From positions 62,001 through 126,000 of the IMG/VR virus record IMGVR_UViG_3300033182_000980: 64,000 nucleotides of DNA; one strand, given 5' to 3'. How positions within the stretch are numbered: position 1 is the stretch's first letter; every line of letters starts with the position of its first letter. The notes below the pieces were generated by a model. The model made no database searches, had not been told where the DNA came from, and saw only the letters and a list, made by a program, of their open reading frames with translations. This document shows, piece after piece, positions 3,723 to 35,784 of this stretch. The translations under genes and the position numbers were made by a program.

Positions 3723-4667
3723 ATGCTCATCACAATCAGAAAAAATAATATGCTTGTCAAAGGCTTCTCCAAAGAGGGGCGATGCAACTATGCAATGCTT
3801 GAGGACGGTTCTAAGATACAGTCCTCAAAGCTAGGTAGTATCTCTATTGAGTGTTCAGAGTGTTCTAAGCAAAGCCACATACAATGGAGAACTGCCCTGT
3901 TAAGTAAGCCTTACTTATGCCAATCCTGTGTTGTTTCTGGAGATCGTAATGGGTTCTTTGGTAAGACACACACAGAGGAGACTAAGAAAGCCCACTCTGA
4001 CTTTATGTGTGGGAGATACACGGGTGAGGATAATGCTTTTTATGGCAAGACTCACACTAAAGAAGCGAGGGAAAAGATACGCTCGGCACAAACATGGCAA
4101 AAAGGATCATCTAATCCGTTCTTTGGTAAGACTCATTCGCCAGATACGATTGAAAAGATCATTGAGGGGAACAAAGCCTATCGGGAGTCTCTAACGGAGG
4201 AACAAAGAGCTAAAACCTCAAAAAAGTTGAGTCGTACTCAAAAGGATTTCCAAAAGAGCAACCCAAAATACTACAGGGAAATAAAGCAAAGGGGAGCATA
4301 CGCTTCGGCTAAGTCTCACAAGAAGTACAAGATGAACAAGCTAGAAGAAAAGGTTTATCAAGTGCTTCAAGATCACTTTACAGATATGTTCAAGTACACA
4401 GTCATCTTAGGTCATTTGCAGTTTGACTTTGGGTGTAAGAGTAAGCGTATCTTGATTGAGGTTCAAGGGGATTATTGGCATGGAAACCCTGCTCTCTATG
4501 GAGAGGGTAAAAGACCCTTGAACAACATACAGATCAACAAACAAGCTAAGGATAAGGTAAAACAATCATGGTGTGAGGACCATGACTTTACCCTACTCAC
4601 ATTTTGGGAAAGCGATATAAACGCAGACCCTAACATCATCTTAAGAGGAGTTTTAGATGTTATCTAA
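3723..4667 (+). CDS. Free-standing homing endonuclease: three NUMOD3 motifs plus C-terminal Vsr/DUF559-like nuclease
   Basis: [42 protein letters not shown]; FDF...[12 protein letters not shown]...WE. Start at 3723 chosen from the GAGGT RBS (ORF open from 3690). Confidence 0.85.
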
Positions 4668-5938: not shown

Positions 5939-6342
5939 TAAGCACCTGCTATGTGTTCGATTTCTTCTTCGACCTTCATAGCAAGCATATACCAACGCTC
6001 TGCAAGGTCTTGGTAGTAGGGGTCTTTGCCTCTACTGAAAGAGGGCATCTTTTCAAGCTCACGCTCCATTTCTTGCATAGCCTTTAAGACTTTTTCTGCT
6101 GACCTACGAACAGGCGTAGAAGCTGTTCTCTGCTTGCTCTTGTACTCATTCGTGAGCCGATACTCTTTTACGAGAGCTTCATATTCTTTGTTCTGCGATG
6201 GGGTAAGACGATCTTGGTCTTCAAGGAGTTGAAGCTCATCTAACCTTGCTCTATCTTTTTTAGACATAGTGCGAGCTTGTCTCTCAAGGCGAGCAATACG
6301 ACCCTCAAGTTCACGAATTATTTCTGAAGCTGATCTTCTCAT
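5935..6342 (-). CDS. MRRSASE-leader protein 1 (unknown cargo)
   Basis: MRRSASEIIRELEGRIARLERQA; GGAGAA RBS. Confidence 0.85.
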   Translation of the reverse strand: MRRSASEIIRELEGRIARLERQARTMSKKDRARLDELQLLEDQDRLTPSQNKEYEALVKEYRLTNEYKSKQRTASTPVRRSAEKVLKAMQEMERELEKMPSFSRGKDPYYQDLAERWYMLAMKVEEEIEHIAGAY

Positions 6343-16105: not shown

Positions 16106-17827
16106 ATGAGAGACAATCAGATATACCTCTACAATACCACAGTAGATGAAGCACTAGAGATACTTGGGATGGAATCTCGTAGAGACACAGCCCTCATTAA
16201 CCATGACGAGTTTGAAGTTAAGCTCAATAAAAAAGGCGACCATGTTATGGTGACTCTGTTAAGGGGTCTTGGCGACATGGACATTGATGACGGCATTATT
16301 CAGATCAAGATTGATTTTCCAGGTAAGTACCGAGATATGGAGAGCATTGATCGTGTACGAGCCGTTCTTGCACTTAATCCAAACAGCGATTGGTGGAAGG
16401 GCATCGTAGAGGAGCTTGAGGAGGGCTATCCTTTATCATGGAAAGTCGAAGAAATCTTGATTGAAACTGAAGAGCGTATTGAGAATCCAGATGAGGATGT
16501 ACTTGCTATGCTCGACCAAGCGATTGCAAGCAATCCTCGTTTTAGACTCCTTCAATCTTTCAAACAGCAAGTTTTATCTGGTCGTGAACTTTCAGAGCGA
16601 CAGATGGAGATCCTTGAGGAGAACTTAGGTTCAAGTGTTCCCTCAAACACCAATCAGATCGCTCGGATTAATGAAGCTCTCGCACTTGATCCTAGAAATC
16701 GTTTCGTTAGCCAGCTCAAGCAAAAAGCCGAGAATGGCATCACTTTGTCCGAGAGACAGATGAATGTGGTGGAAGAGATCATCGGAAGTCAGTCATCTCC
16801 TGCCGCTAAGATGCTCGCTGACCTTAAAGCCAATGCTTATCTTGAGCGTGAGGACTTTATGCTTATCAATAAAGGTCAGCGTAGGGGCATTGACTCACTC
16901 AATGATGAGGAGCGTAAGCGTTTGCGTCATCTCATCTACCGTAATGAGCGTAAGCTCGACAACACTTACTCCAAAGATGAAGTCAGAAGGCTTCTAAAGA
17001 AAGGAACAGCTATGCGTAGACTCGCTAGTGAAGTTATTCGTGATCTTGAGATGAGGATTGCTCGTCTTGAGGCAAACCTCAATCGTACTGCAAGCATGAC
17101 TCGTGAAGCCGCTGGAGATCCTCAGCTCGCTGGAGTTCGCTCAAGCACAGCTTACCATGAGGGTCGCTCAATGGCAGAGGCTACCTCTTGTATGCTTTAT
17201 CTCATCGGTGAGTCAGAGAATAAGAGCAAGTTCTACGAGATGGTCATCAACGGTTCTACCGTAGAAATCCTTTATGGTCGTCTCGGTTCTACCGGTCGTA
17301 GAGCAGATAAGTCATTCATGGACTCTTATGATGCACAGGCTTTCTTTGTTAAACAGCTCAAGTCTAAGCTCAAGAAAGGTTATGTCTCTGCATTCGCACA
17401 GCGTGGCGAGCATCGTAAGAGCGGTCCTCTCTATGGAACTTACCCAATCGGACTTACCTCTACTCCTGGACCTTGGCAGAACCAAGACATCGCTTATGAC
17501 CAAGCGATGATTACAGATACAGTTTCTGTTGTTCGTGCGGCGATTGCTTCATTCCAAGAGGACGGTATTGTTGATGAGCGAGCAATTGCTATGCTTATGT
17601 CTACACAGCGTTCACTCGGATTAAACAGGGATCAACTCTCACAAGAGTGTGCTAAAGAGATCGGTCTTGCTCTTGATCGTATCCAAGGTACAGGTCGTGC
17701 GGGTCGTCAGCCTGTTGAAGTTCGTACTCGTACTGCCATCAAGGGTCTACAGAAACTCATGCGTAAACTTGAGGGTGCTATGACTGGTGGTCGTAGAAGA
17801 GCTTTTTATCAAAAAAAAAATTGGTAA
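16106..17827 (+). CDS. Repeat-containing protein with internal MRRLASE leader and WGR domain
   Basis: Tandem ~50-aa repeats (NP..F..S.KQ....G..LSERQM..IEE); MRRLASEVIRDLEMRIARLE from 17012; NKSKFYEM...VEILYGRLGSTG...KLKKGY is WGR-like. Confidence 0.75.
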   Translation: MRDNQIYLYNTTVDEALEILGMESRRDTALINHDEFEVKLNKKGDHVMVTLLRGLGDMDIDDGIIQIKIDFPGKYRDMESIDRVRAVLALNPNSDWWKGIVEELEEGYPLSWKVEEILIETEERIENPDEDVLAMLDQAIASNPRFRLLQSFKQQVLSGRELSERQMEILEENLGSSVPSNTNQIARINEALALDPRNRFVSQLKQKAENGITLSERQMNVVEEIIGSQSSPAAKMLADLKANAYLEREDFMLINKGQRRGIDSLNDEERKRLRHLIYRNERKLDNTYSKDEVRRLLKKGTAMRRLASEVIRDLEMRIARLEANLNRTASMTREAAGDPQLAGVRSSTAYHEGRSMAEATSCMLYLIGESENKSKFYEMVINGSTVEILYGRLGSTGRRADKSFMDSYDAQAFFVKQLKSKLKKGYVSAFAQRGEHRKSGPLYGTYPIGLTSTPGPWQNQDIAYDQAMITDTVSVVRAAIASFQEDGIVDERAIAMLMSTQRSLGLNRDQLSQECAKEIGLALDRIQGTGRAGRQPVEVRTRTAIKGLQKLMRKLEGAMTGGRRRAFYQKKNW

Positions 17828-29901: not shown

Positions 29902-30456
29902 ATGAACTACAATCGCATGATCCGAAGAGTCGCTTCTGCACACATGAGGAAGCTCGCACAAGAGAAGCCAGCAAGCGTTATGTTCGCTGAAGCTGTTATT
30001 GATACGAGAGACTTACTCAACTGGTTTCAAGATCAATCTGGTCTTGATCCCGAAGCAATGGGTTGGAAGGTTGCCGCCCACCACATGACCATAGAATTCT
30101 TTGACAAGAAAGAAAAGAAAGCTCTTAAGAGAGAGGGTCGTGCAGAGTCTAACATCCTTGAGCCTTATGCTGATCTCATTGGTAAGTCTGTTATTCTTGA
30201 TCTAGTCGGTTATGCACATGACGATAAGGGCATGGCTGTTCTTGTTGAGCCTAAAGGTCCTCTAGCTCGCCTTGTTAAGAACGCTGATCCACATATCACC
30301 ATCGCTACTAATGGTGTCGGGGCTAAATACAGCAACGAGCTTCTTGCAAAGGGAGAAATCATTCCAGCTCGTGGTTCGATTCAAGCACGAGTCGGCTGGA
30401 AAGATGCTCGTTCGGGTCAAGATATGTACGATCTTCCTTGGGACTTTGGTCAGTAA
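29902..30456 (+). CDS. 2H phosphoesterase (tRNA-ligase CPDase-like) with RVA-type leader
   Basis: Two HxT motifs: AHHMTI and DPHITIA; N-terminal MIRRVASAHMRKLA. Confidence 0.75.
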   Translation: MNYNRMIRRVASAHMRKLAQEKPASVMFAEAVIDTRDLLNWFQDQSGLDPEAMGWKVAAHHMTIEFFDKKEKKALKREGRAESNILEPYADLIGKSVILDLVGYAHDDKGMAVLVEPKGPLARLVKNADPHITIATNGVGAKYSNELLAKGEIIPARGSIQARVGWKDARSGQDMYDLPWDFGQ

Positions 30457-31239: not shown

Positions 31240-32214
31240 ATGGCAGGACTACTTGAGTTCAGTACAACTTATAAGCCATTTCAGTATCCTTGGGCGATGA
31301 ACATCGCTGAGGAACACGAGAAAATTCATTGGGGGACTTGGGAGGCGAAGCTACAGGAAGATGTGAATCAATGGAAGGGTGGTCAGATTTCTGACGCAGA
31401 GAAACAACACATCACTCAAATCCTACGCATCTTTACTCAATCCGATGTCGCTGTCGGTGGGAACTACTGCGACATCTTTATCAAAGAGTTCAAGAACAAC
31501 GAAATCAGAAATATGCTCTTGAGCTTCGCCAATCGAGAGGGGACACATCAGAGGTCATACGCTCTCCTTAATGACACTCTAGGACTCGATGTTAAGGAAT
31601 ACTCAGCGTTCCTTGAGTTTGATGAGATGCGTGAGAAGATCGAGTTTATGACCCAAGCTCCAGAGGGTCTAGGTCGTATCACCAACCTTGCCTTTGAGCT
31701 TGCTCGCTCTGTCTGTAATGAGGGCATGAGCCTCTTCTCTGCTTTCGTCATGCTCCTCAACTTCCAACGCTTCGGCAAGATGCGTGGTATGTGCGAAATC
31801 GTTGAATGGTCCATTAGAGATGAGACTACCCATGTAAATGGTATGACCCAGCTCTTTCACGCTTACTGTAAAGAACACCCTCGTGTTGTGACTGATAAAC
31901 TCAAGAGCTACATCTACACCAACTATGAGAAGGCTGTTGAGCTAGAGGACGCTCTCGTTGATCTCGTCTTTGATCAAGTTGAGCTTGAGGGTCTGACCTC
32001 TCAAGAGGTTAAGACCTATGTCCGATACCTCGCTGATCGTAGACTTCTACAACTCGGACTTAAACCCATCTTCGGTCAAAAGAAGAACCCTCTACTATGG
32101 CTCGATTGGGTCATTAGTGGAGACTCTTTCAAAAACTTCTTCGAGGGTGTCGTGTCCGACTACAGTAGTAATGGGCTTTCGGGCGATTGGGATTGGGATA
32201 AAATCACAGCATAA
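31240..32214 (+). CDS. nrdB: Ribonucleotide reductase beta subunit
   Basis: YKPFQYPWA, HW, FTQSD, REGTHQRSY, EGMSLFSAF, WSIRDETTH di-iron and tyrosyl radical motifs. Confidence 0.95.
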   Translation: MAGLLEFSTTYKPFQYPWAMNIAEEHEKIHWGTWEAKLQEDVNQWKGGQISDAEKQHITQILRIFTQSDVAVGGNYCDIFIKEFKNNEIRNMLLSFANREGTHQRSYALLNDTLGLDVKEYSAFLEFDEMREKIEFMTQAPEGLGRITNLAFELARSVCNEGMSLFSAFVMLLNFQRFGKMRGMCEIVEWSIRDETTHVNGMTQLFHAYCKEHPRVVTDKLKSYIYTNYEKAVELEDALVDLVFDQVELEGLTSQEVKTYVRYLADRRLLQLGLKPIFGQKKNPLLWLDWVISGDSFKNFFEGVVSDYSSNGLSGDWDWDKITA

Positions 32215-32286
32215 CAAGCATTTAGGCTTGTTTAAATCTTAGTCCTCAAGTACGCTTTTCAATAAATACTTTGAAAGGACACTTGA

Positions 32287-33375
32287 ATGGCTAAAGGCTA
32301 TTATGTTTATCGTCAGTTCAACAAGAGGACAGGCGAGTATTACATCGGCAAGGGTACTTACTCTGATCGAGATCCCGATGGGAGTAAGTACAAAGGCTCT
32401 GGTATCTTGCTCTTGCGTAAAATGAACGCTCACCCAAATGACTTTGAGAAAGAAATCTTAAAGGATTTCGAGAGCGAAGAGGACGCTTACGCTTATGAGG
32501 CAGAGCTTGTGGGTGAGAGGTATATCGGTGGTGCAGACCATGACCCACTTTGTTTGAACATGAACAGTGGAGGCATGGGTTCGTCCTCTAATGCTTTGAA
32601 GCATTATTACTCTAACCCTATCGTGAAGATGGAGATGAGTGAGAGGATGAAAACCTTATGGGAAGATGAGGATTATCGGGAGAAAGTTCTAGCTTCAAGG
32701 GAGGGTGAAGCTAGAGAGAGGTGGCACGAGTCTCATCAAAAGGCTCTTAAAGACCCAGAGGTGAGAGCGAGAATAAAGGAGGGGGCAAACAATCCTCACA
32801 AAAAGAAATCAGTGCGAGAGGCACAGATTAAAATGAAACCGATCAATGTCGAGAAAGACGGAGTGGAGATTGAGATCCCTAGAGGAGAGTTAGCCGATTA
32901 CTTTAGGTTGGGTTGGTCGCTTTGCTCTAAGGGTGTTGTGAACATTCACCATATGGACATTGGGATATATAGCTGTGGTCAGCATGATGTGGTGAAGCAT
33001 CTTGTGTTGGAGCATGGATTCAAGTTTGGAACTCACTATGACTTAGAGCGGGTTAACTATGATGTGATCTCTAAGTTAGCGGGTGTTCGGGAGGCCAAGT
33101 CTAAGGGTCAGATGGGGAATTGGTCTTTGAAGCCTGTGAAGCTGATTAACTTAGAGGGTGAGGTAGAGCTTGTGCCCCGTGATGTTTACTTGGACAAGTT
33201 AGAGGAGGGCTATACCTTTAAGAGTGCGAATGTGATAATAAGAAACCACACGCTCAAGCAGACTTGCGTCTTAGGCAAGGGTAGAGCGAGGAGGGTCTTG
33301 CTAGAAAGGGGAGGTTGGGAGCTTGGTAGCAAGCGAGGTTATGAGGCAGTGAGTACCAAGTCTCTTGATTTGTAG
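32287..33375 (+). CDS. Free-standing GIY-YIG (Seg-like) homing endonuclease
   Basis: YYVY...TGEYYIGKG, YKGSG, AYAYEAEL, CLN; located downstream of nrdB. Confidence 0.8.
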   Translation: MAKGYYVYRQFNKRTGEYYIGKGTYSDRDPDGSKYKGSGILLLRKMNAHPNDFEKEILKDFESEEDAYAYEAELVGERYIGGADHDPLCLNMNSGGMGSSSNALKHYYSNPIVKMEMSERMKTLWEDEDYREKVLASREGEARERWHESHQKALKDPEVRARIKEGANNPHKKKSVREAQIKMKPINVEKDGVEIEIPRGELADYFRLGWSLCSKGVVNIHHMDIGIYSCGQHDVVKHLVLEHGFKFGTHYDLERVNYDVISKLAGVREAKSKGQMGNWSLKPVKLINLEGEVELVPRDVYLDKLEEGYTFKSANVIIRNHTLKQTCVLGKGRARRVLLERGGWELGSKRGYEAVSTKSLDL

Positions 33376-33384
33376 TTTATTTAT
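33373..33384 (+). promoter_or_regulatory. Motif A
   Basis: TAGTTTATTTAT upstream of leader protein 2; TAG is the GIY-YIG stop. Confidence 0.65.
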
Positions 33385-33434
33385 TGACTCTCCATTGGTG
33401 ATCTTTAACCCTTAACCGACAATGGAGAACTATT

Positions 33435-33779
33435 ATGAGAAGATCAGCAAGCGAAGTCTTAAGAAACTTAGAAATGCGTATCGCAAGACTTGAGAAGCAA
33501 GCAGGATTCACTGTAGGGCAAGAAGTACCTTATACACTAAGAACCCTTAAAAAAGTGATGTCAGAGGGTTATGGATTCAAAGTGATAAGTGTAGGGGGGG
33601 GTTTGAGTGATACTCTTGAATACAGTTTAACCTCCGAGCAAGTGGCTAAGATCAGTTCTAGGGGGAAGGTTGATGTTATGCTAAAAAACATTCAACAAGA
33701 GCTAAAGTTCTCGATAGAGCCTAACCTAAAGAGGAAGGGTCGTAAAAACTTCATTGTCCTCACAGAAAACCCTGCTTAA
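33435..33779 (+). CDS. MRRSASE-leader protein 2
   Basis: MRRSASEVLRNLEMRIARLEKQA. Confidence 0.85.
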   Translation: MRRSASEVLRNLEMRIARLEKQAGFTVGQEVPYTLRTLKKVMSEGYGFKVISVGGGLSDTLEYSLTSEQVAKISSRGKVDVMLKNIQQELKFSIEPNLKRKGRKNFIVLTENPA

Positions 33780-33860
33780 TGGCGAATGGGCAGAGGCTGT
33801 GAGTACCAAGTCTCTCAAGTAAGGGCGAATGGGATTGGTCAAATATCTCGGCATGATTTG

Positions 33861-33872
33861 TAGTTTATTTAT
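33861..33872 (+). promoter_or_regulatory. Motif A
   Basis: TAGTTTATTTAT upstream of leader protein 3. Confidence 0.65.
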
Positions 33873-33922
33873 AGGTTCTCCATTGGTGATCTTTTAACCC
33901 TTTAACCTCATGGAGAAATAAA

Positions 33923-34249
33923 ATGAGAAGATCAGCATCAGAAATTATCAGAAATCTTGAGCAAAGAATTGCTCGTCTTGAAAGTGAAAATGCGAAGACC
34001 GCAGGTCTTATGACAGTCCACACCTTAGATACAAGTAGTCGTGAAATACCTTACGGCACAACTGAATCAGAAGTTATGAACACTCAAGACCTTCCAAGTT
34101 TGCTTTTAAAGTCTGAAGTGACCATTACAAGAGACGGACTACAAGCAATAGATAGAGACGGTCGAGTCCACACGATTGAAATCTCAAAAGACGAGCTTAT
34201 TAAAGCTCTACTACCTCTAGCTAGACCTACATCTGTTAAGATGAAATAA
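33923..34249 (+). CDS. MRRSASE-leader protein 3
   Basis: MRRSASEIIRNLEQRIARLESENAKTA. Confidence 0.85.
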   Translation: MRRSASEIIRNLEQRIARLESENAKTAGLMTVHTLDTSSREIPYGTTESEVMNTQDLPSLLLKSEVTITRDGLQAIDRDGRVHTIEISKDELIKALLPLARPTSVKMK

Positions 34250-34253
34250 GAAA

Positions 34254-35132
34254 TTAATTAAGTCTTTTTGTCAGTTCGAGATCAAACTTTTCGATTGCTT
34301 CTCTAAACTGATCTTCGGACATGATTTGACCTCTCGCTGAACCAGCGATTTGATCGTGACCCCCAGCCCTATCTCCCCACCACTCTTGAACAAGTCGTCT
34401 ACAAGATAGGTTAGGGATTGGGTCGGCAGTAGAAATCCTAATCTTCTTATATTTTTCATCGTAAGTGATGATCGCATTTTCTCCACGATAGAGGTGGTTG
34501 ACCTTTTCACCTCTTGTTCGTCTAACGATCAATCCACAGGGTCGCATCTCTACAAAAGATGACTCATCTAGCTTTTCTTGGAGGTAGATGTGAGCATTAC
34601 CCATCCGAGTAGCTAGATGACCGTCATTGAGCATTTCCTTTATGAAGTCGAACGCTTGGTAGCAGAAATCGGTCACATCGTTGTTTCGTTTGGGGTCTAT
34701 CTCTGGATGGTTTTCATTGATCCATGCGTTTAGTCCATTATAAAGAACCCAACAGGGGTGGTCTTGTCTTGCCTTGTGGATGCCATTGGTGTCGATATGT
34801 TCAGCATAGAACCAGAATACAGGATTATCCTCGAACTGATCTGTAGCTCTCATAAGCCCACCGAGAGTGTCGATGTCGATATGTGAGATGAGGGCTACTT
34901 CATCATCATTGAGCTTTGGTATGTTCGAGTCATTACAAGGGGCTGGTCTACCAAAGGGGGTAACATGGCGACCGACATAAGGAGAACCGAGAGGTTGGTG
35001 GTGAGCGGCGGTGTACTTTGTACCTTCAAGGACGAACCCCCCATATTCTGCTTCCACCGTGAGTGCAGGAGGATTTGATAATCTAAGAGTGTCGGAGGCT
35101 AACTGTGAGGTCGGGGAAAGTATAACTAACAT
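34254..35132 (-). CDS. DHH-like phosphoesterase-related protein
   Basis: AAHH, SHIDIDTLGG and C-terminal AGGHDQIAGS resemble DHH/DHHA1 motifs. Confidence 0.45.
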   Translation of the reverse strand: MLVILSPTSQLASDTLRLSNPPALTVEAEYGGFVLEGTKYTAAHHQPLGSPYVGRHVTPFGRPAPCNDSNIPKLNDDEVALISHIDIDTLGGLMRATDQFEDNPVFWFYAEHIDTNGIHKARQDHPCWVLYNGLNAWINENHPEIDPKRNNDVTDFCYQAFDFIKEMLNDGHLATRMGNAHIYLQEKLDESSFVEMRPCGLIVRRTRGEKVNHLYRGENAIITYDEKYKKIRISTADPIPNLSCRRLVQEWWGDRAGGHDQIAGSARGQIMSEDQFREAIEKFDLELTKRLN

Positions 35133-35148: not shown

Positions 35149-35190
35149 AATGAGCGATTACTAAACATATTACCTTTGAGGAGAATAGAC

Positions 35191-35784
35191 ATGAGAAATC
35201 TTGTTGCGAGAGTGGCGACAAAGTATATGAAAACAAGCTCGGAGAATCTTGAGCTTCATATCTTTGACTTTGATAACACATTGTTCCGTAGCCCCGAACC
35301 ACCAGAGTGGTGGTCGAATAAGAAAATGGGCTATTGGTTCAATGAGGCTATTAGTTTGAGTGAGCCTTTTATCCCTCAAAAGCCAAGTGGGGATTATTGG
35401 TATGGGAGCGTTGTCGGTGAGGCTAAACGCTCTATCTCTAACATGGACACTCTTGCGATCATGTGTACAGGTCGCCTTAATGATAACGGTGCGATGCGTT
35501 ATCGTGTTGCCGAGTTATTAAAGGGTAAAGGGTTGGACTTTGATGAGGTTCACCTAAAGCCAGGTACAGGATCGACATCTCGCTACAAGGCTAAACTGAC
35601 CTTTGATCTCCTCAAGAAGTACCCAAACATTCAGAGCGTGTCTGTTTGGGAAGATACTCAGAAGAACCTCGATGCCATTGAGACAGTGTGTGATCACTTT
35701 GGCGTTGAGTTCAACGCTCACCTCATTAAACCTAACCCATACCCTGTCTCTATCACCAAAGAGCAGTATGACCTGCTAAAGTAA
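35191..35784 (+). CDS. HAD-superfamily phosphatase (Swiss-army-knife RNA-repair-like HAD) with RVA-type leader
   Basis: HIFDFDNTLFRSP (DxD), CTGR, LKP, VWED; N-terminal LVARVATKYMKTS. Confidence 0.75.
   Translation: MRNLVARVATKYMKTSSENLELHIFDFDNTLFRSPEPPEWWSNKKMGYWFNEAISLSEPFIPQKPSGDYWYGSVVGEAKRSISNMDTLAIMCTGRLNDNGAMRYRVAELLKGKGLDFDEVHLKPGTGSTSRYKAKLTFDLLKKYPNIQSVSVWEDTQKNLDAIETVCDHFGVEFNAHLIKPNPYPVSITKEQYDLLK

What the first reader, a model, noticed from the sequence alone, without database searches (positions are those of the whole stretch)
33343..34249. Footprint of cassette expansion: tandem leader genes bounded by direct repeats
Seen: the last codons of the GIY-YIG gene (GAGGCAGTGAGTACCAAGTCTCT, 33343-33365) recur at 33793-33815. 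Each copy is followed by a near-identical TGATTTGTAGTTTATTTAT...CTCCATTGGTGATC...TAACCC..TAACC...ATGGAGAA...ATGAGAAGATCAGCA block, but the two cargoes are unrelated. Inference: duplication or recombination at the cassette followed by cargo exchange, next to a homing endonuclease that can supply double-strand breaks. This suggests how the leader spreads.
Basis: partly seen in the sequence, partly recalled or inferred. Interest (0 to 1): 0.6.

Follow-up and report, generated by a model that had tools for sequence, protein, structure and literature searches.

The report
Homing-endonuclease scars between two leader genes
Between two small genes of an uncultured 376-kb phage lies a 77-base scar made of the ends of a second ribonucleotide-reductase gene and a second homing-endonuclease gene; it shows that this site is repeatedly broken and repaired, and that gene cassettes are swapped there between related phages.

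Summary
The repeat is real: 33343-33365 recurs at 33793-33815 (22/23), nowhere else in the 375,691-bp genome. It is not a simple duplication. The stretch between genes A and B (33780-33856) holds 10 bases of an nrdB 3' end, the last 9 codons and stop of a second endonuclease allele, then a complete nrdB 3' end of another allele (GEWDWSNISA*). That end is the working nrdB end in relatives L009, L096 and endonuclease-free L102, where it abuts the same promoter.

Relatives show the endonuclease intact, frameshifted, truncated, almost fully deleted and absent at this one site. They also carry orphan nrdB ends and different genes in the slot: cargo C; D plus B; or unrelated genes. The "near-identical block" is a promoter (core 41 copies, 0.5 expected), 5' UTR and 24-residue leader shared by about 30 genes. 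Cassettes come and go as promoter-to-stop units.

Best reading: two alleles of the nrdB-endonuclease-cassette junction were joined out of register by illegitimate repair at a homing hot spot. This is not duplication followed by cargo exchange. It resembles T-even internal-protein loci and PeSL cassettes with free-standing endonucleases. The exact order of events and the endonuclease's role are inferred. No independent contig spans 33790|33791.

The parts
31240..32214 (+). nrdB (ribonucleotide reductase small subunit), working copy; its last 11 codons (32182-32214) are the 'DKITA' allele of the 3' end
   Evidence: Pfam PF00268 E 1.6e-66; 3' end read
32215..32286 (+). spacer between nrdB and the endonuclease gene; it travels with the endonuclease in relatives
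   Evidence: Present in L009, L096, L010-L013, L107 and L110, absent in endonuclease-free L102
32287..33375 (+). free-standing homing endonuclease gene (GIY-YIG-like, 362 aa); its stop TAG lies inside the downstream promoter
   Evidence: phrog_314 E 3.9e-18; best Pfam hits SegE_GIY-YIG and GIY-YIG are below threshold; single copy; presence/absence and decay states in relatives
33343..33365 (+). direct repeat copy 1: endonuclease codons EAVSTKS(L)
33369..33384 (+). phage promoter motif of cassette A
   Evidence: core TAGTTTNTTTAT occurs 41 times in the genome against 0.5 in shuffles; 40 are followed by an ORF
33385..33434 (+). 5' UTR of cassette A, with conserved CTCCATTGGTGATC, TTAACCCTTAACC and the ribosome site in ATGGAGA
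   Evidence: conserved across about 20 cassettes; folding not significant; no Rfam hit
33435..33779 (+). leader gene A (114 aa): leader residues 1-24, then a complete small alpha/beta domain
   Evidence: stand-alone 114-130-aa homologues; model pLDDT 86, helix 5-22 plus globular domain; promoter-to-stop unit found in another locus in L089
33781..33790 (+). orphan fragment of an nrdB 3' end (GGCGAATGGG = codons G-E-W plus G)
   Evidence: identical to 33824-33833 (family D14); in runs X1 and X2 the same 10 bases after gene A run on as a full nrdB end (loose ends at 33790)
33791..33792 (+). two unassigned bases (CA) at the junction
   Evidence: read from the sequence
33793..33822 (+). relic of a second endonuclease allele: last 9 codons (EAVSTKSLK) and its own stop TAA; contains direct repeat copy 2 (33793-33815)
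   Evidence: same relic with the same left edge in run X7 behind a different gene (record 25); comparable relic (start codon plus last 6 codons) in L107, L112 and L014
33824..33856 (+). orphan complete nrdB 3' end, 'SNISA' allele (GEWDWSNISA, stop TGA 33854-33856), directly before the promoter
   Evidence: 32/34 identical to the working nrdB end of L009 and L096; same end-to-promoter junction in endonuclease-free L102
33857..33872 (+). phage promoter motif of cassette B
33873..33922 (+). 5' UTR of cassette B
33923..34249 (+). leader gene B (108 aa)
   Evidence: homologues at 70-78%, next to the same convergent 292-aa gene in L101-L104; whole cassette 33855-34259 missing in a contig of run X7 (joint 33854>34260)
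34254..35132 (-). conserved convergent gene (292 aa, no family) that closes the variable slot
   Evidence: 94% in L010, 93% nt in L096, 76% in L101

Best explanation
The window comes from an uncultured 376-kb phage. In its group, the stretch from the 3' end of nrdB to a conserved convergent 292-aa gene is a recombination hot spot centred on a free-standing GIY-YIG-like homing endonuclease gene. Originally nrdB ended directly in front of a phage promoter that drives a 'leader cassette' (promoter, 5' UTR, 24-residue N-terminal leader, variable cargo). This state survives in L102. The endonuclease entered at this junction. Where repair was imperfect, it left the recipient's own nrdB end behind as an orphan. 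The 77 bases between genes A and B are such a scar. They are the remains of a second nrdB-endonuclease junction of another allele: 10 bases of nrdB end, the last 9 codons plus stop of the endonuclease, and a complete SNISA nrdB end in front of promoter B. So cassette B once stood directly behind an nrdB-endonuclease unit. The block now upstream (nrdB with DKITA end, intact endonuclease, cassette A) came from another lineage and was joined out of register by illegitimate repair. This put two alleles of the same junction, each with its own cargo, in tandem. Shown: the composition of the scar, the allelic difference, the population polymorphism, and cassettes behaving as promoter-to-stop units. 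Inferred: that endonuclease-made breaks started the events, the order of events, and that gene A hitch-hiked with the endonuclease. The leader is most likely a shared targeting or docking helix, as in T4 internal proteins. That is inference only.
For: 1. Scar composition. 33824-33856 reads GEWDWSNISA* in frame and is 32/34 identical to the working nrdB end of L009 and L096. In endonuclease-free L102 the same end runs straight into the promoter. 33793-33822 reads EAVSTKSLK*. 33781-33790 repeats the first 10 bases of the nrdB end.
2. Two alleles. The resident nrdB has the DKITA end. The resident endonuclease-promoter junction equals the relic junction minus 38 bases.
3. Same pattern elsewhere. 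L012, L098, L109 and L111 have a DKITA working end plus an orphan SNISA end before the next promoter. The L010 endonuclease ORF runs into a duplicated nrdB end.
4. Homing cycle at one site. The endonuclease is intact in the window, L096, L010 and L012. It is frameshifted in L133 and L134, cut after about codon 59 in L135, and reduced to ATGGT plus 6 codons in L107, L112 and L014. It is absent in L102.
5. Junctions cluster. They fall in the last 12 codons of nrdB, at -36 to -21 from the stop.
6. Slot content differs. L096 (90-94% nt identical) has one cassette with cargo C. L102 has D plus B. L010 and L012 have unrelated genes with no homologue in this genome.
7. Runs X1 and X2 hold endonuclease-promoter-A as here, and gene A followed by an undisrupted nrdB end.
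8. Mosaic identity to L009/L096 versus L012 along nrdB and the endonuclease gene.
Against: No contig from another sample spans the exact junction 33790|33791, and the source reads were not available. Two bases (CA) are unassigned. 33774-33790 can be aligned to nrdB in more than one way. What follows the nrdB end in X1 and X2 (TAG CCAATGT...) does not look like the known nrdB-endonuclease spacer, so the predicted intermediate with a second full endonuclease is unverified. Nothing shows that this endonuclease is active or where it cuts. L096 carries the endonuclease together with a SNISA end, so the DKITA end is not required for immunity. Ordinary illegitimate recombination would give the same scar.
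Confidence: 0.6

Rival explanations
1. The same out-of-register join of two alleles happened, but the endonuclease is a bystander. Replication template switching or general illegitimate recombination between co-infecting phages produced the scar, and the variable slot is simply tolerant of change.
For: Leader cassettes move between loci that have no endonuclease nearby. Gene A lies beside a primase-like gene in L089 and L129-L131. The g275295 cassette lies in another locus in L093-L095. Fusions at leader remnants (L089 322-aa protein, P0006, P0030) show recombination at the repeats without any nuclease.
Against: At least six independent junctions fall within the last 12 codons of nrdB, next to the endonuclease insertion point. 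Orphan nrdB ends are found only in genomes that have or had the endonuclease. This is the pattern expected of site-specific breaks.
Confidence: 0.22
2. One reading: a tandem duplication inside one genome of endonuclease end + promoter + leader + cargo, followed by replacement of one cargo.
For: The promoter-UTR blocks of A and B are the second most similar pair of 435. The other adjacent pair (g145303/g145958) is the most similar, so neighbours do resemble each other.
Against: The relic carries a different nrdB end allele and an older junction form than the resident copy. The leaders are only 70% alike, rank 249 of 435. The end of the first unit is not homologous to the end of the second. A and B each have orthologues in other genomes and places.
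Confidence: 0.1
3. Assembly chimera of two co-occurring strains in the metagenome.
For: The genome is a metagenome assembly. The population is highly polymorphic exactly here. No independent contig crosses 33790|33791.
Against: The join is not at a shared repeat. A walk through the shared 30-base nrdB end would give gene A - nrdB end - promoter B without the endonuclease relic. Each half of the arrangement is seen separately in other samples (X1 and X2 up to 33790; X7 from 33792).
Confidence: 0.06

Closest known systems
Internal-protein (IP) loci of T-even phages and PeSL cassettes (Repoila et al. 1994, as cited in PMC2839356; Arbiol et al. 2010, PMC2839356; Comeau et al. 2014, PMC4122927)
   Same: Many unrelated small ORFs share a short conserved N-terminal leader. 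Each is flanked by a conserved promoter-containing block of about 70 bp. Close relatives differ by insertion, deletion and replacement of whole ORFs with breakpoints at those blocks. Variable genes cluster in tandem.
   Different: The phage lineage is unrelated: no T4 capsid or prohead-protease family was found (controls silent). The nearest GenBank record is an uncultured 485-kb phage at 36% in the helicase. The leader is 24 residues and helical, not the 10-11-residue T4 capsid-targeting sequence. The promoter motif is different. The stem-loop is not supported thermodynamically. Packaging into the capsid is untested. About 30 copies are spread over the whole genome.
Free-standing GIY-YIG (Seg-type) and HNH (Mob-type) homing endonucleases of T4-like phages, including mobE between nrdA and nrdB (review PMC2988022)
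   Same: The endonuclease gene sits between two genes and next to a ribonucleotide-reductase gene. It shows presence/absence polymorphism among relatives, mosaic flanks consistent with co-conversion, and a downstream promoter overlapping its 3' end. The review argues that such an arrangement favours retention of endonuclease sequence.
   Different: Here repeated, imperfect invasions left nested scars: orphan nrdB ends and an orphan endonuclease end. A neighbouring accessory cassette (A) lies between the endonuclease and an orphan nrdB end, as if carried in with it. Activity and cleavage site are unknown.
Cyclical gain, degeneration and loss of homing endonuclease genes (Goddard and Burt model; from my own knowledge, not looked up here)
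   Same: Intact, frameshifted, truncated, almost fully deleted and empty states occur at one site in one population.
   Different: The setting is a phage population, with scars that suggest re-invasion of an already scarred site.
Morons (promoter-bearing accessory genes of phages; from my own knowledge)
   Same: Each cassette is an independent promoter-to-stop unit inserted between conserved genes.
   Different: The cassettes share a coding leader and a 5' UTR as well as a promoter. They form a family of about 30 in one genome.

Membership tests
GIY-YIG homing endonuclease | N-terminal GIY...YIG nuclease motifs | tested here: inconclusive
   Residues 5-24 read YYVYRQ...EYYIGKG. The two best Pfam hits are SegE_GIY-YIG (E 0.12) and GIY-YIG (E 1.1), both below threshold. 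There is no sequence match to solved structures.
GIY-YIG homing endonuclease | Membership of a phage homing-endonuclease protein family | tested here: met
   phrog_314 'homing endonuclease', E 3.9e-18, residues 3-190
GIY-YIG homing endonuclease | Mobile: present or absent at the same site in close relatives, with mosaic flanks | tested here: met
   Absent in L102, intact in L096, L010 and L012, decayed in L107, L133 and L135. Mosaic identity along nrdB and the endonuclease gene.
GIY-YIG homing endonuclease | Site-specific double-strand cleavage of the endonuclease-free allele | not testable with these tools
   Only indirect: junctions cluster at -36 to -21 from the nrdB stop.
PeSL-type mobile regulatory cassette | Conserved promoter block flanking variable ORFs | tested here: met
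   The promoter core occurs 41 times against 0.5 expected, and 40 copies are followed by an ORF. Blocks lie upstream of A, B and about 20 other leader genes.
PeSL-type mobile regulatory cassette | Stem-loop/terminator overlapping the promoter | tested here: not met
   No terminator-like site at the blocks. UTR folds have z-scores of -1.3 and -0.65.
PeSL-type mobile regulatory cassette | Differences between close relatives begin and end at the blocks | tested here: met
   Window-L096 homology ends in the leader (33504) and resumes after the B stop (34264). L089 homology runs 33369-33772. The X7 joint is 33854>34260.
PeSL-type mobile regulatory cassette | Excised circles between two blocks | not testable with these tools
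   Only assembled contigs of other samples were available.
T4-type capsid-targeted internal proteins | Short conserved N-terminal leader on otherwise unrelated proteins | tested here: met
   30 genes share the leader. Cargoes are mostly unrelated. In the model of A the leader is a separate helix.
T4-type capsid-targeted internal proteins | Packaged in the head and leader removed by the prohead protease | not testable with these tools
   PF03420 and PF07068 were not found, but the controls did not ring either. No leader match in GenBank phages.
Simple tandem duplication | Both units derive from the same allele, and the end of unit 1 is homologous to the end of unit 2 | tested here: not met
   The nrdB end allele and junction form differ. 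The unit ends are unrelated.

The most novel reading that the evidence does not exclude
The homing endonuclease acts as a vehicle for a neighbouring accessory gene. Cassette A lies between the endonuclease and an orphan nrdB end in this genome and in runs X1 and X2, as if endonuclease plus cassette were copied together into an already scarred site (nested re-invasion). If so, homing at this hot spot spreads members of a 30-gene leader family between phages. That family may be a jumbo-phage counterpart of T4's injected internal proteins. The endonuclease recognition site may also overlap the multi-copy cassette promoter.
Probability: 0.25. Interest if true: 0.65.

Novelty: new variant of a known kind. 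Interest (0 to 1): 0.45.

Why it matters
The scar is a readable record of how a large uncultured phage gains and exchanges accessory genes. A homing endonuclease site next to an essential gene acts as an entry point, and promoter-leader blocks act as portable handles. It extends the T-even picture (polymorphic leader-bearing proteins shuffled at conserved regulatory blocks) to an unrelated jumbo-phage lineage with a new leader and promoter. It also points to a testable cleavage region, the last 12 codons of nrdB. The set of natural variants (empty, intact, decayed, scarred) could be used to reconstruct the homing cycle.

Tried and rejected
- Gene A as a truncated gene. I first read it this way because L089 encodes a 322-aa homologue. 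I rejected this. Stand-alone homologues of 114-130 aa end at the same place. The L089 protein is a fusion of three cargo modules joined at leader remnants.
- Paralogous endonuclease copy in the genome as the source of the repeat: none.
- Exact search for the relic junction in viral contigs: no match.
- Known RNA family in the block: none.
- Hairpin that hides the ribosome site: complementary segments exist, but folding energies are not unusual.
- Sigma-70 promoters or intrinsic terminators at the blocks: none.
- Function of cargo A by fold: the model is confident, but there is no PDB match at E<=0.001.
- Cargo functions by Pfam: only a WGR domain in one leader protein, and one sub-threshold hit.
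- T4-type capsid or protease families: not found, but the control genomes were silent, so this is uninformative.
- Leader in GenBank phages: no match.
- Read-level excision: not possible. The runs found hold at most 11% of the words and are kept as contigs.
- Predicted intermediate (a second full endonuclease behind gene A in X1/X2): I searched partial endonuclease proteins. This found more decay states but not that contig.
No other genetic code was used.

Full report
**Setting**

The window is bases 62001-126000 of a 375,691-bp virus record, 45% G+C. The nearest GenBank record is an uncultured 485-kb phage, 36% identical in the helicase. The genes around the finding are:
- nrdB, 31240-32214 (PF00268, E 1.7e-66);
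- a 362-aa endonuclease gene, 32287-33375 (phrog_314, E 3.9e-18; GIY-YIG motifs by eye, Pfam below threshold);
- leader gene A, 33435-33779;
- leader gene B, 33923-34249;
- a convergent 292-aa gene, 34254-35132;
- a HAD-family gene and a UvrD-like helicase.

**Observation**

The 23 bases at 33343-33365 recur at 33793-33815 with one change, and nowhere else in the window or the genome. Downstream of each copy lies a shared block. The alignment shows that copy 1 equals copy 2 minus 38 bases, 33816-33853. The block is 87% identical before the ATG. The leader coding part is only 70% identical, rank 249 of 435 cassette pairs. The cargoes have no detectable similarity.

**What the block is**

Thirty genes in the genome begin with MRRSASEIIRNLEMRIARLERQA or a close variant. 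Most are preceded by the same promoter motif and 5' UTR.
- The promoter core TAGTTTNTTTAT occurs 41 times against 0.5 in shuffles. In 40 cases an ORF follows, and many of these genes have no leader. It is therefore a general promoter of this phage.
- Cargoes are mostly unrelated to one another. One has a WGR domain.
- In the model of A, the leader is a separate helix (residues 5-22) in front of a confident globular domain with no PDB match.
- The UTR has segments complementary to the ribosome site and to codons 3-5. Folding energies are not unusual, and no Rfam family matches.

**What lies between A and B**

Read in frame, the stretch is:
- 33781-33790: GGCGAATGGG;
- 33791-33792: CA;
- 33793-33822: EAVSTKSLK plus stop;
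- 33824-33856: GEWDWSNISA plus stop TGA, followed at once by promoter B.

The last piece is 32/34 identical to the working 3' end of nrdB in L009 and L096. The window's own nrdB ends in GDWDWDKITA, as in L011 and L012. In L102, a contig without the endonuclease, nrdB ends in GEWDWSNISA, stop TGA, and runs directly into the promoter of a leader gene. So the relic preserves the empty-site junction. The resident endonuclease-promoter junction keeps only the TGA of it.

**Relatives**

A scan with nrdB found 494 related stretches. Further scans used the endonuclease, A, B and an nrdB-end pattern.

| Relative | Identity to window | Arrangement |
|---|---|---|
| L096 | 90-94% nt | nrdB(SNISA) - spacer - endonuclease - promoter - leader - cargo C - 292-aa gene; homology ends at 33504 and resumes at 34264 |
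| L102 | nrdB 87% aa | nrdB - D - B homologue (78%) - 292-aa gene |
| L010 | nrdB 90% aa | endonuclease ORF runs into a duplicated nrdB end, then a promoter and genes absent from this genome |
| L012, L098, L109, L111 | nrdB 87% aa (L012) | DKITA working end plus an orphan SNISA end, with the first 11 bases of the spacer, before the next promoter |

The endonuclease is frameshifted in L133 and L134 and cut after about codon 59 in L135. It is reduced to ATGGT plus its last 6 codons in L107, L112 and L014. Identity along nrdB and the endonuclease gene switches between L009/L096-like and L012-like.

**Cassettes as units**

- The homologue of A in L089 matches 33369-33772, promoter to last codons, and lies in a different locus. 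Other A homologues lie in still other places, with no nrdB fragment behind them.
- A is complete, not truncated. Stand-alone homologues of 114-130 aa end at the same point.
- The 322-aa L089 protein is three cargo modules fused at leader remnants. P0006 and P0030 are similar hybrids. This shows recombination within the leaders.

**Contigs of other samples**

- X1 holds endonuclease-promoter-A at about 94% identity.
- X1 and X2 hold gene A, its stop, T and GGCGAATGGG. They then run on as an undisrupted SNISA end. Relative to them, the window has 43 extra bases (33791-33833).
- X7 holds the relic from 33792 behind a different short gene, followed by 9 bases and the 292-aa gene, without cassette B.
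- Another X7 contig has gene A followed by an nrdB end with an internal 18-base deletion, and then a promoter.
- No contig crosses 33790|33791.

**Interpretation**

The junctions of orphan nrdB ends fall between -36 and -21 from the nrdB stop, next to the endonuclease insertion point. They are seen in this window (twice), X1/X2, X7, the L012 group and L010.

The scar is best read as the remains of a second nrdB-endonuclease junction in front of cassette B. The block nrdB-endonuclease-cassette A from another lineage was joined to it out of register. One ordering of events is:
1. a first invasion that left the SNISA end;
2. a second invasion that brought in the endonuclease with cassette A;
3. 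a deletion that removed most of the older endonuclease.

A single illegitimate exchange with a short templated filler fits equally well. Endonuclease-made breaks are the likely trigger but are not shown.

GIY-YIG homing endonucleases have a nuclease domain tethered to a DNA-binding domain that contacts 30-35 bp, and their targets have separate binding and cleavage motifs (PMC3664794). From memory, I-TevI cuts about 23-25 bases from its insertion site. That geometry would fit a cut inside the nrdB end.

Endonuclease 3' ends persist in the relics here and in L107. This may reflect the overlap with the downstream promoter, as argued for T4 embedded promoters (PMC2988022). That is inference.

**Comparison with what is known**

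The closest described system is the T-even internal-protein loci with PeSL-like blocks, which combine a conserved leader, a promoter block and shuffling (PMC2839356, PMC4122927). In T4 a conserved capsid-targeting sequence sits on diverse injected proteins (PMC3012670). Free-standing endonucleases at nrd genes are also described (PMC2988022).

The case here differs in lineage, leader, promoter and copy number, and in having nested scars. I therefore rate it a new variant of a known kind, of moderate interest.

Noticed in passing
whole genome; in the window at 6342(-), 17012, 33435, 33923, 43836, 45342: About 30 genes share the 24-residue leader MRRSASEIIRNLEMRIARLERQA on mostly unrelated cargoes. 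Many lie in tandem arrays (145.3-148.5 kb, 195.3-198.8 kb, 280.9-282.5 kb of the genome). There is no Pfam or named PHROG family, and no match in GenBank phages.
   Followed up: partly
L089:3423-4391; proteins P0006, P0030: Tandem leader genes can fuse. The 322-aa protein of L089 is cargo A plus two other cargo modules joined at leader remnants (LSLLEKQSG). P0006 has an A domain followed by LERRIAQLEGRTAG and another cargo. P0030 has an insertion inside its leader.
   Followed up: partly
window 33385-33449 and 33873-33937, and other cassettes: The start of the 5' UTR (CTCCAT / TCTCAT) is complementary to the ribosome site (ATGGAG) or to the start-codon region (ATGAGAAG). TGATCT is complementary to AGATCA in codons 3-5, and cassettes lacking one mostly lack the other. 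Folding z-scores are weak, so a role in translation control is only a lead.
   Followed up: partly
window 3668, 5291, 12224(-), 16055, 19555, 33373, 33861, 42504, 43773, 45294, 48870: Promoter core TAGTTTNTTTAT occurs 41 times in the genome against 0.5 expected, and almost always 10-50 bases before an ORF. It is a phage-specific promoter class of unknown timing.
   Followed up: partly
L110 (oriented as): nrdB pieces at 393-971 and 1935-2315: In this relative nrdB is interrupted after about codon 197 by roughly 960 bases. This is possibly an intron or another mobile element. No Rfam family reached threshold.
   Followed up: partly
window 17012-17824: A leader protein with a WGR domain (PF05406, E 4e-13). 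It has a paralogue at genome 281768.
   Followed up: no
window 3939-4352; genome 22205-22273(-) and 340167-340301(-): Further possible homing endonuclease genes: a weak phrog_314 match, HNH_3 over threshold, and HNH just under. None is next to a leader cassette.
   Followed up: no
window 29902-30456 and 35176-35784: Possible RNA-repair genes. One has a weak match to the tRNA-ligase phosphodiesterase domain. The other is a HAD domain of the 'Swiss Army Knife' RNA repair family (PF10307, E 1.5e-18).
   Followed up: no
window 32489-32498 and 33340-33349: The endonuclease gene contains TATGAGGCAG twice, at codons ~68-71 and ~351-354. The L135 truncation ends at the first copy and the window's relic starts at the second, so this short repeat may guide internal deletions.
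   Followed up: no
L009:5148-5806: The closest relative by nrdB (98% aa) has two extra leader genes between the 196-aa gene and nrdB, where the window has none. This is another variable slot, on the other side of nrdB.
   Followed up: no
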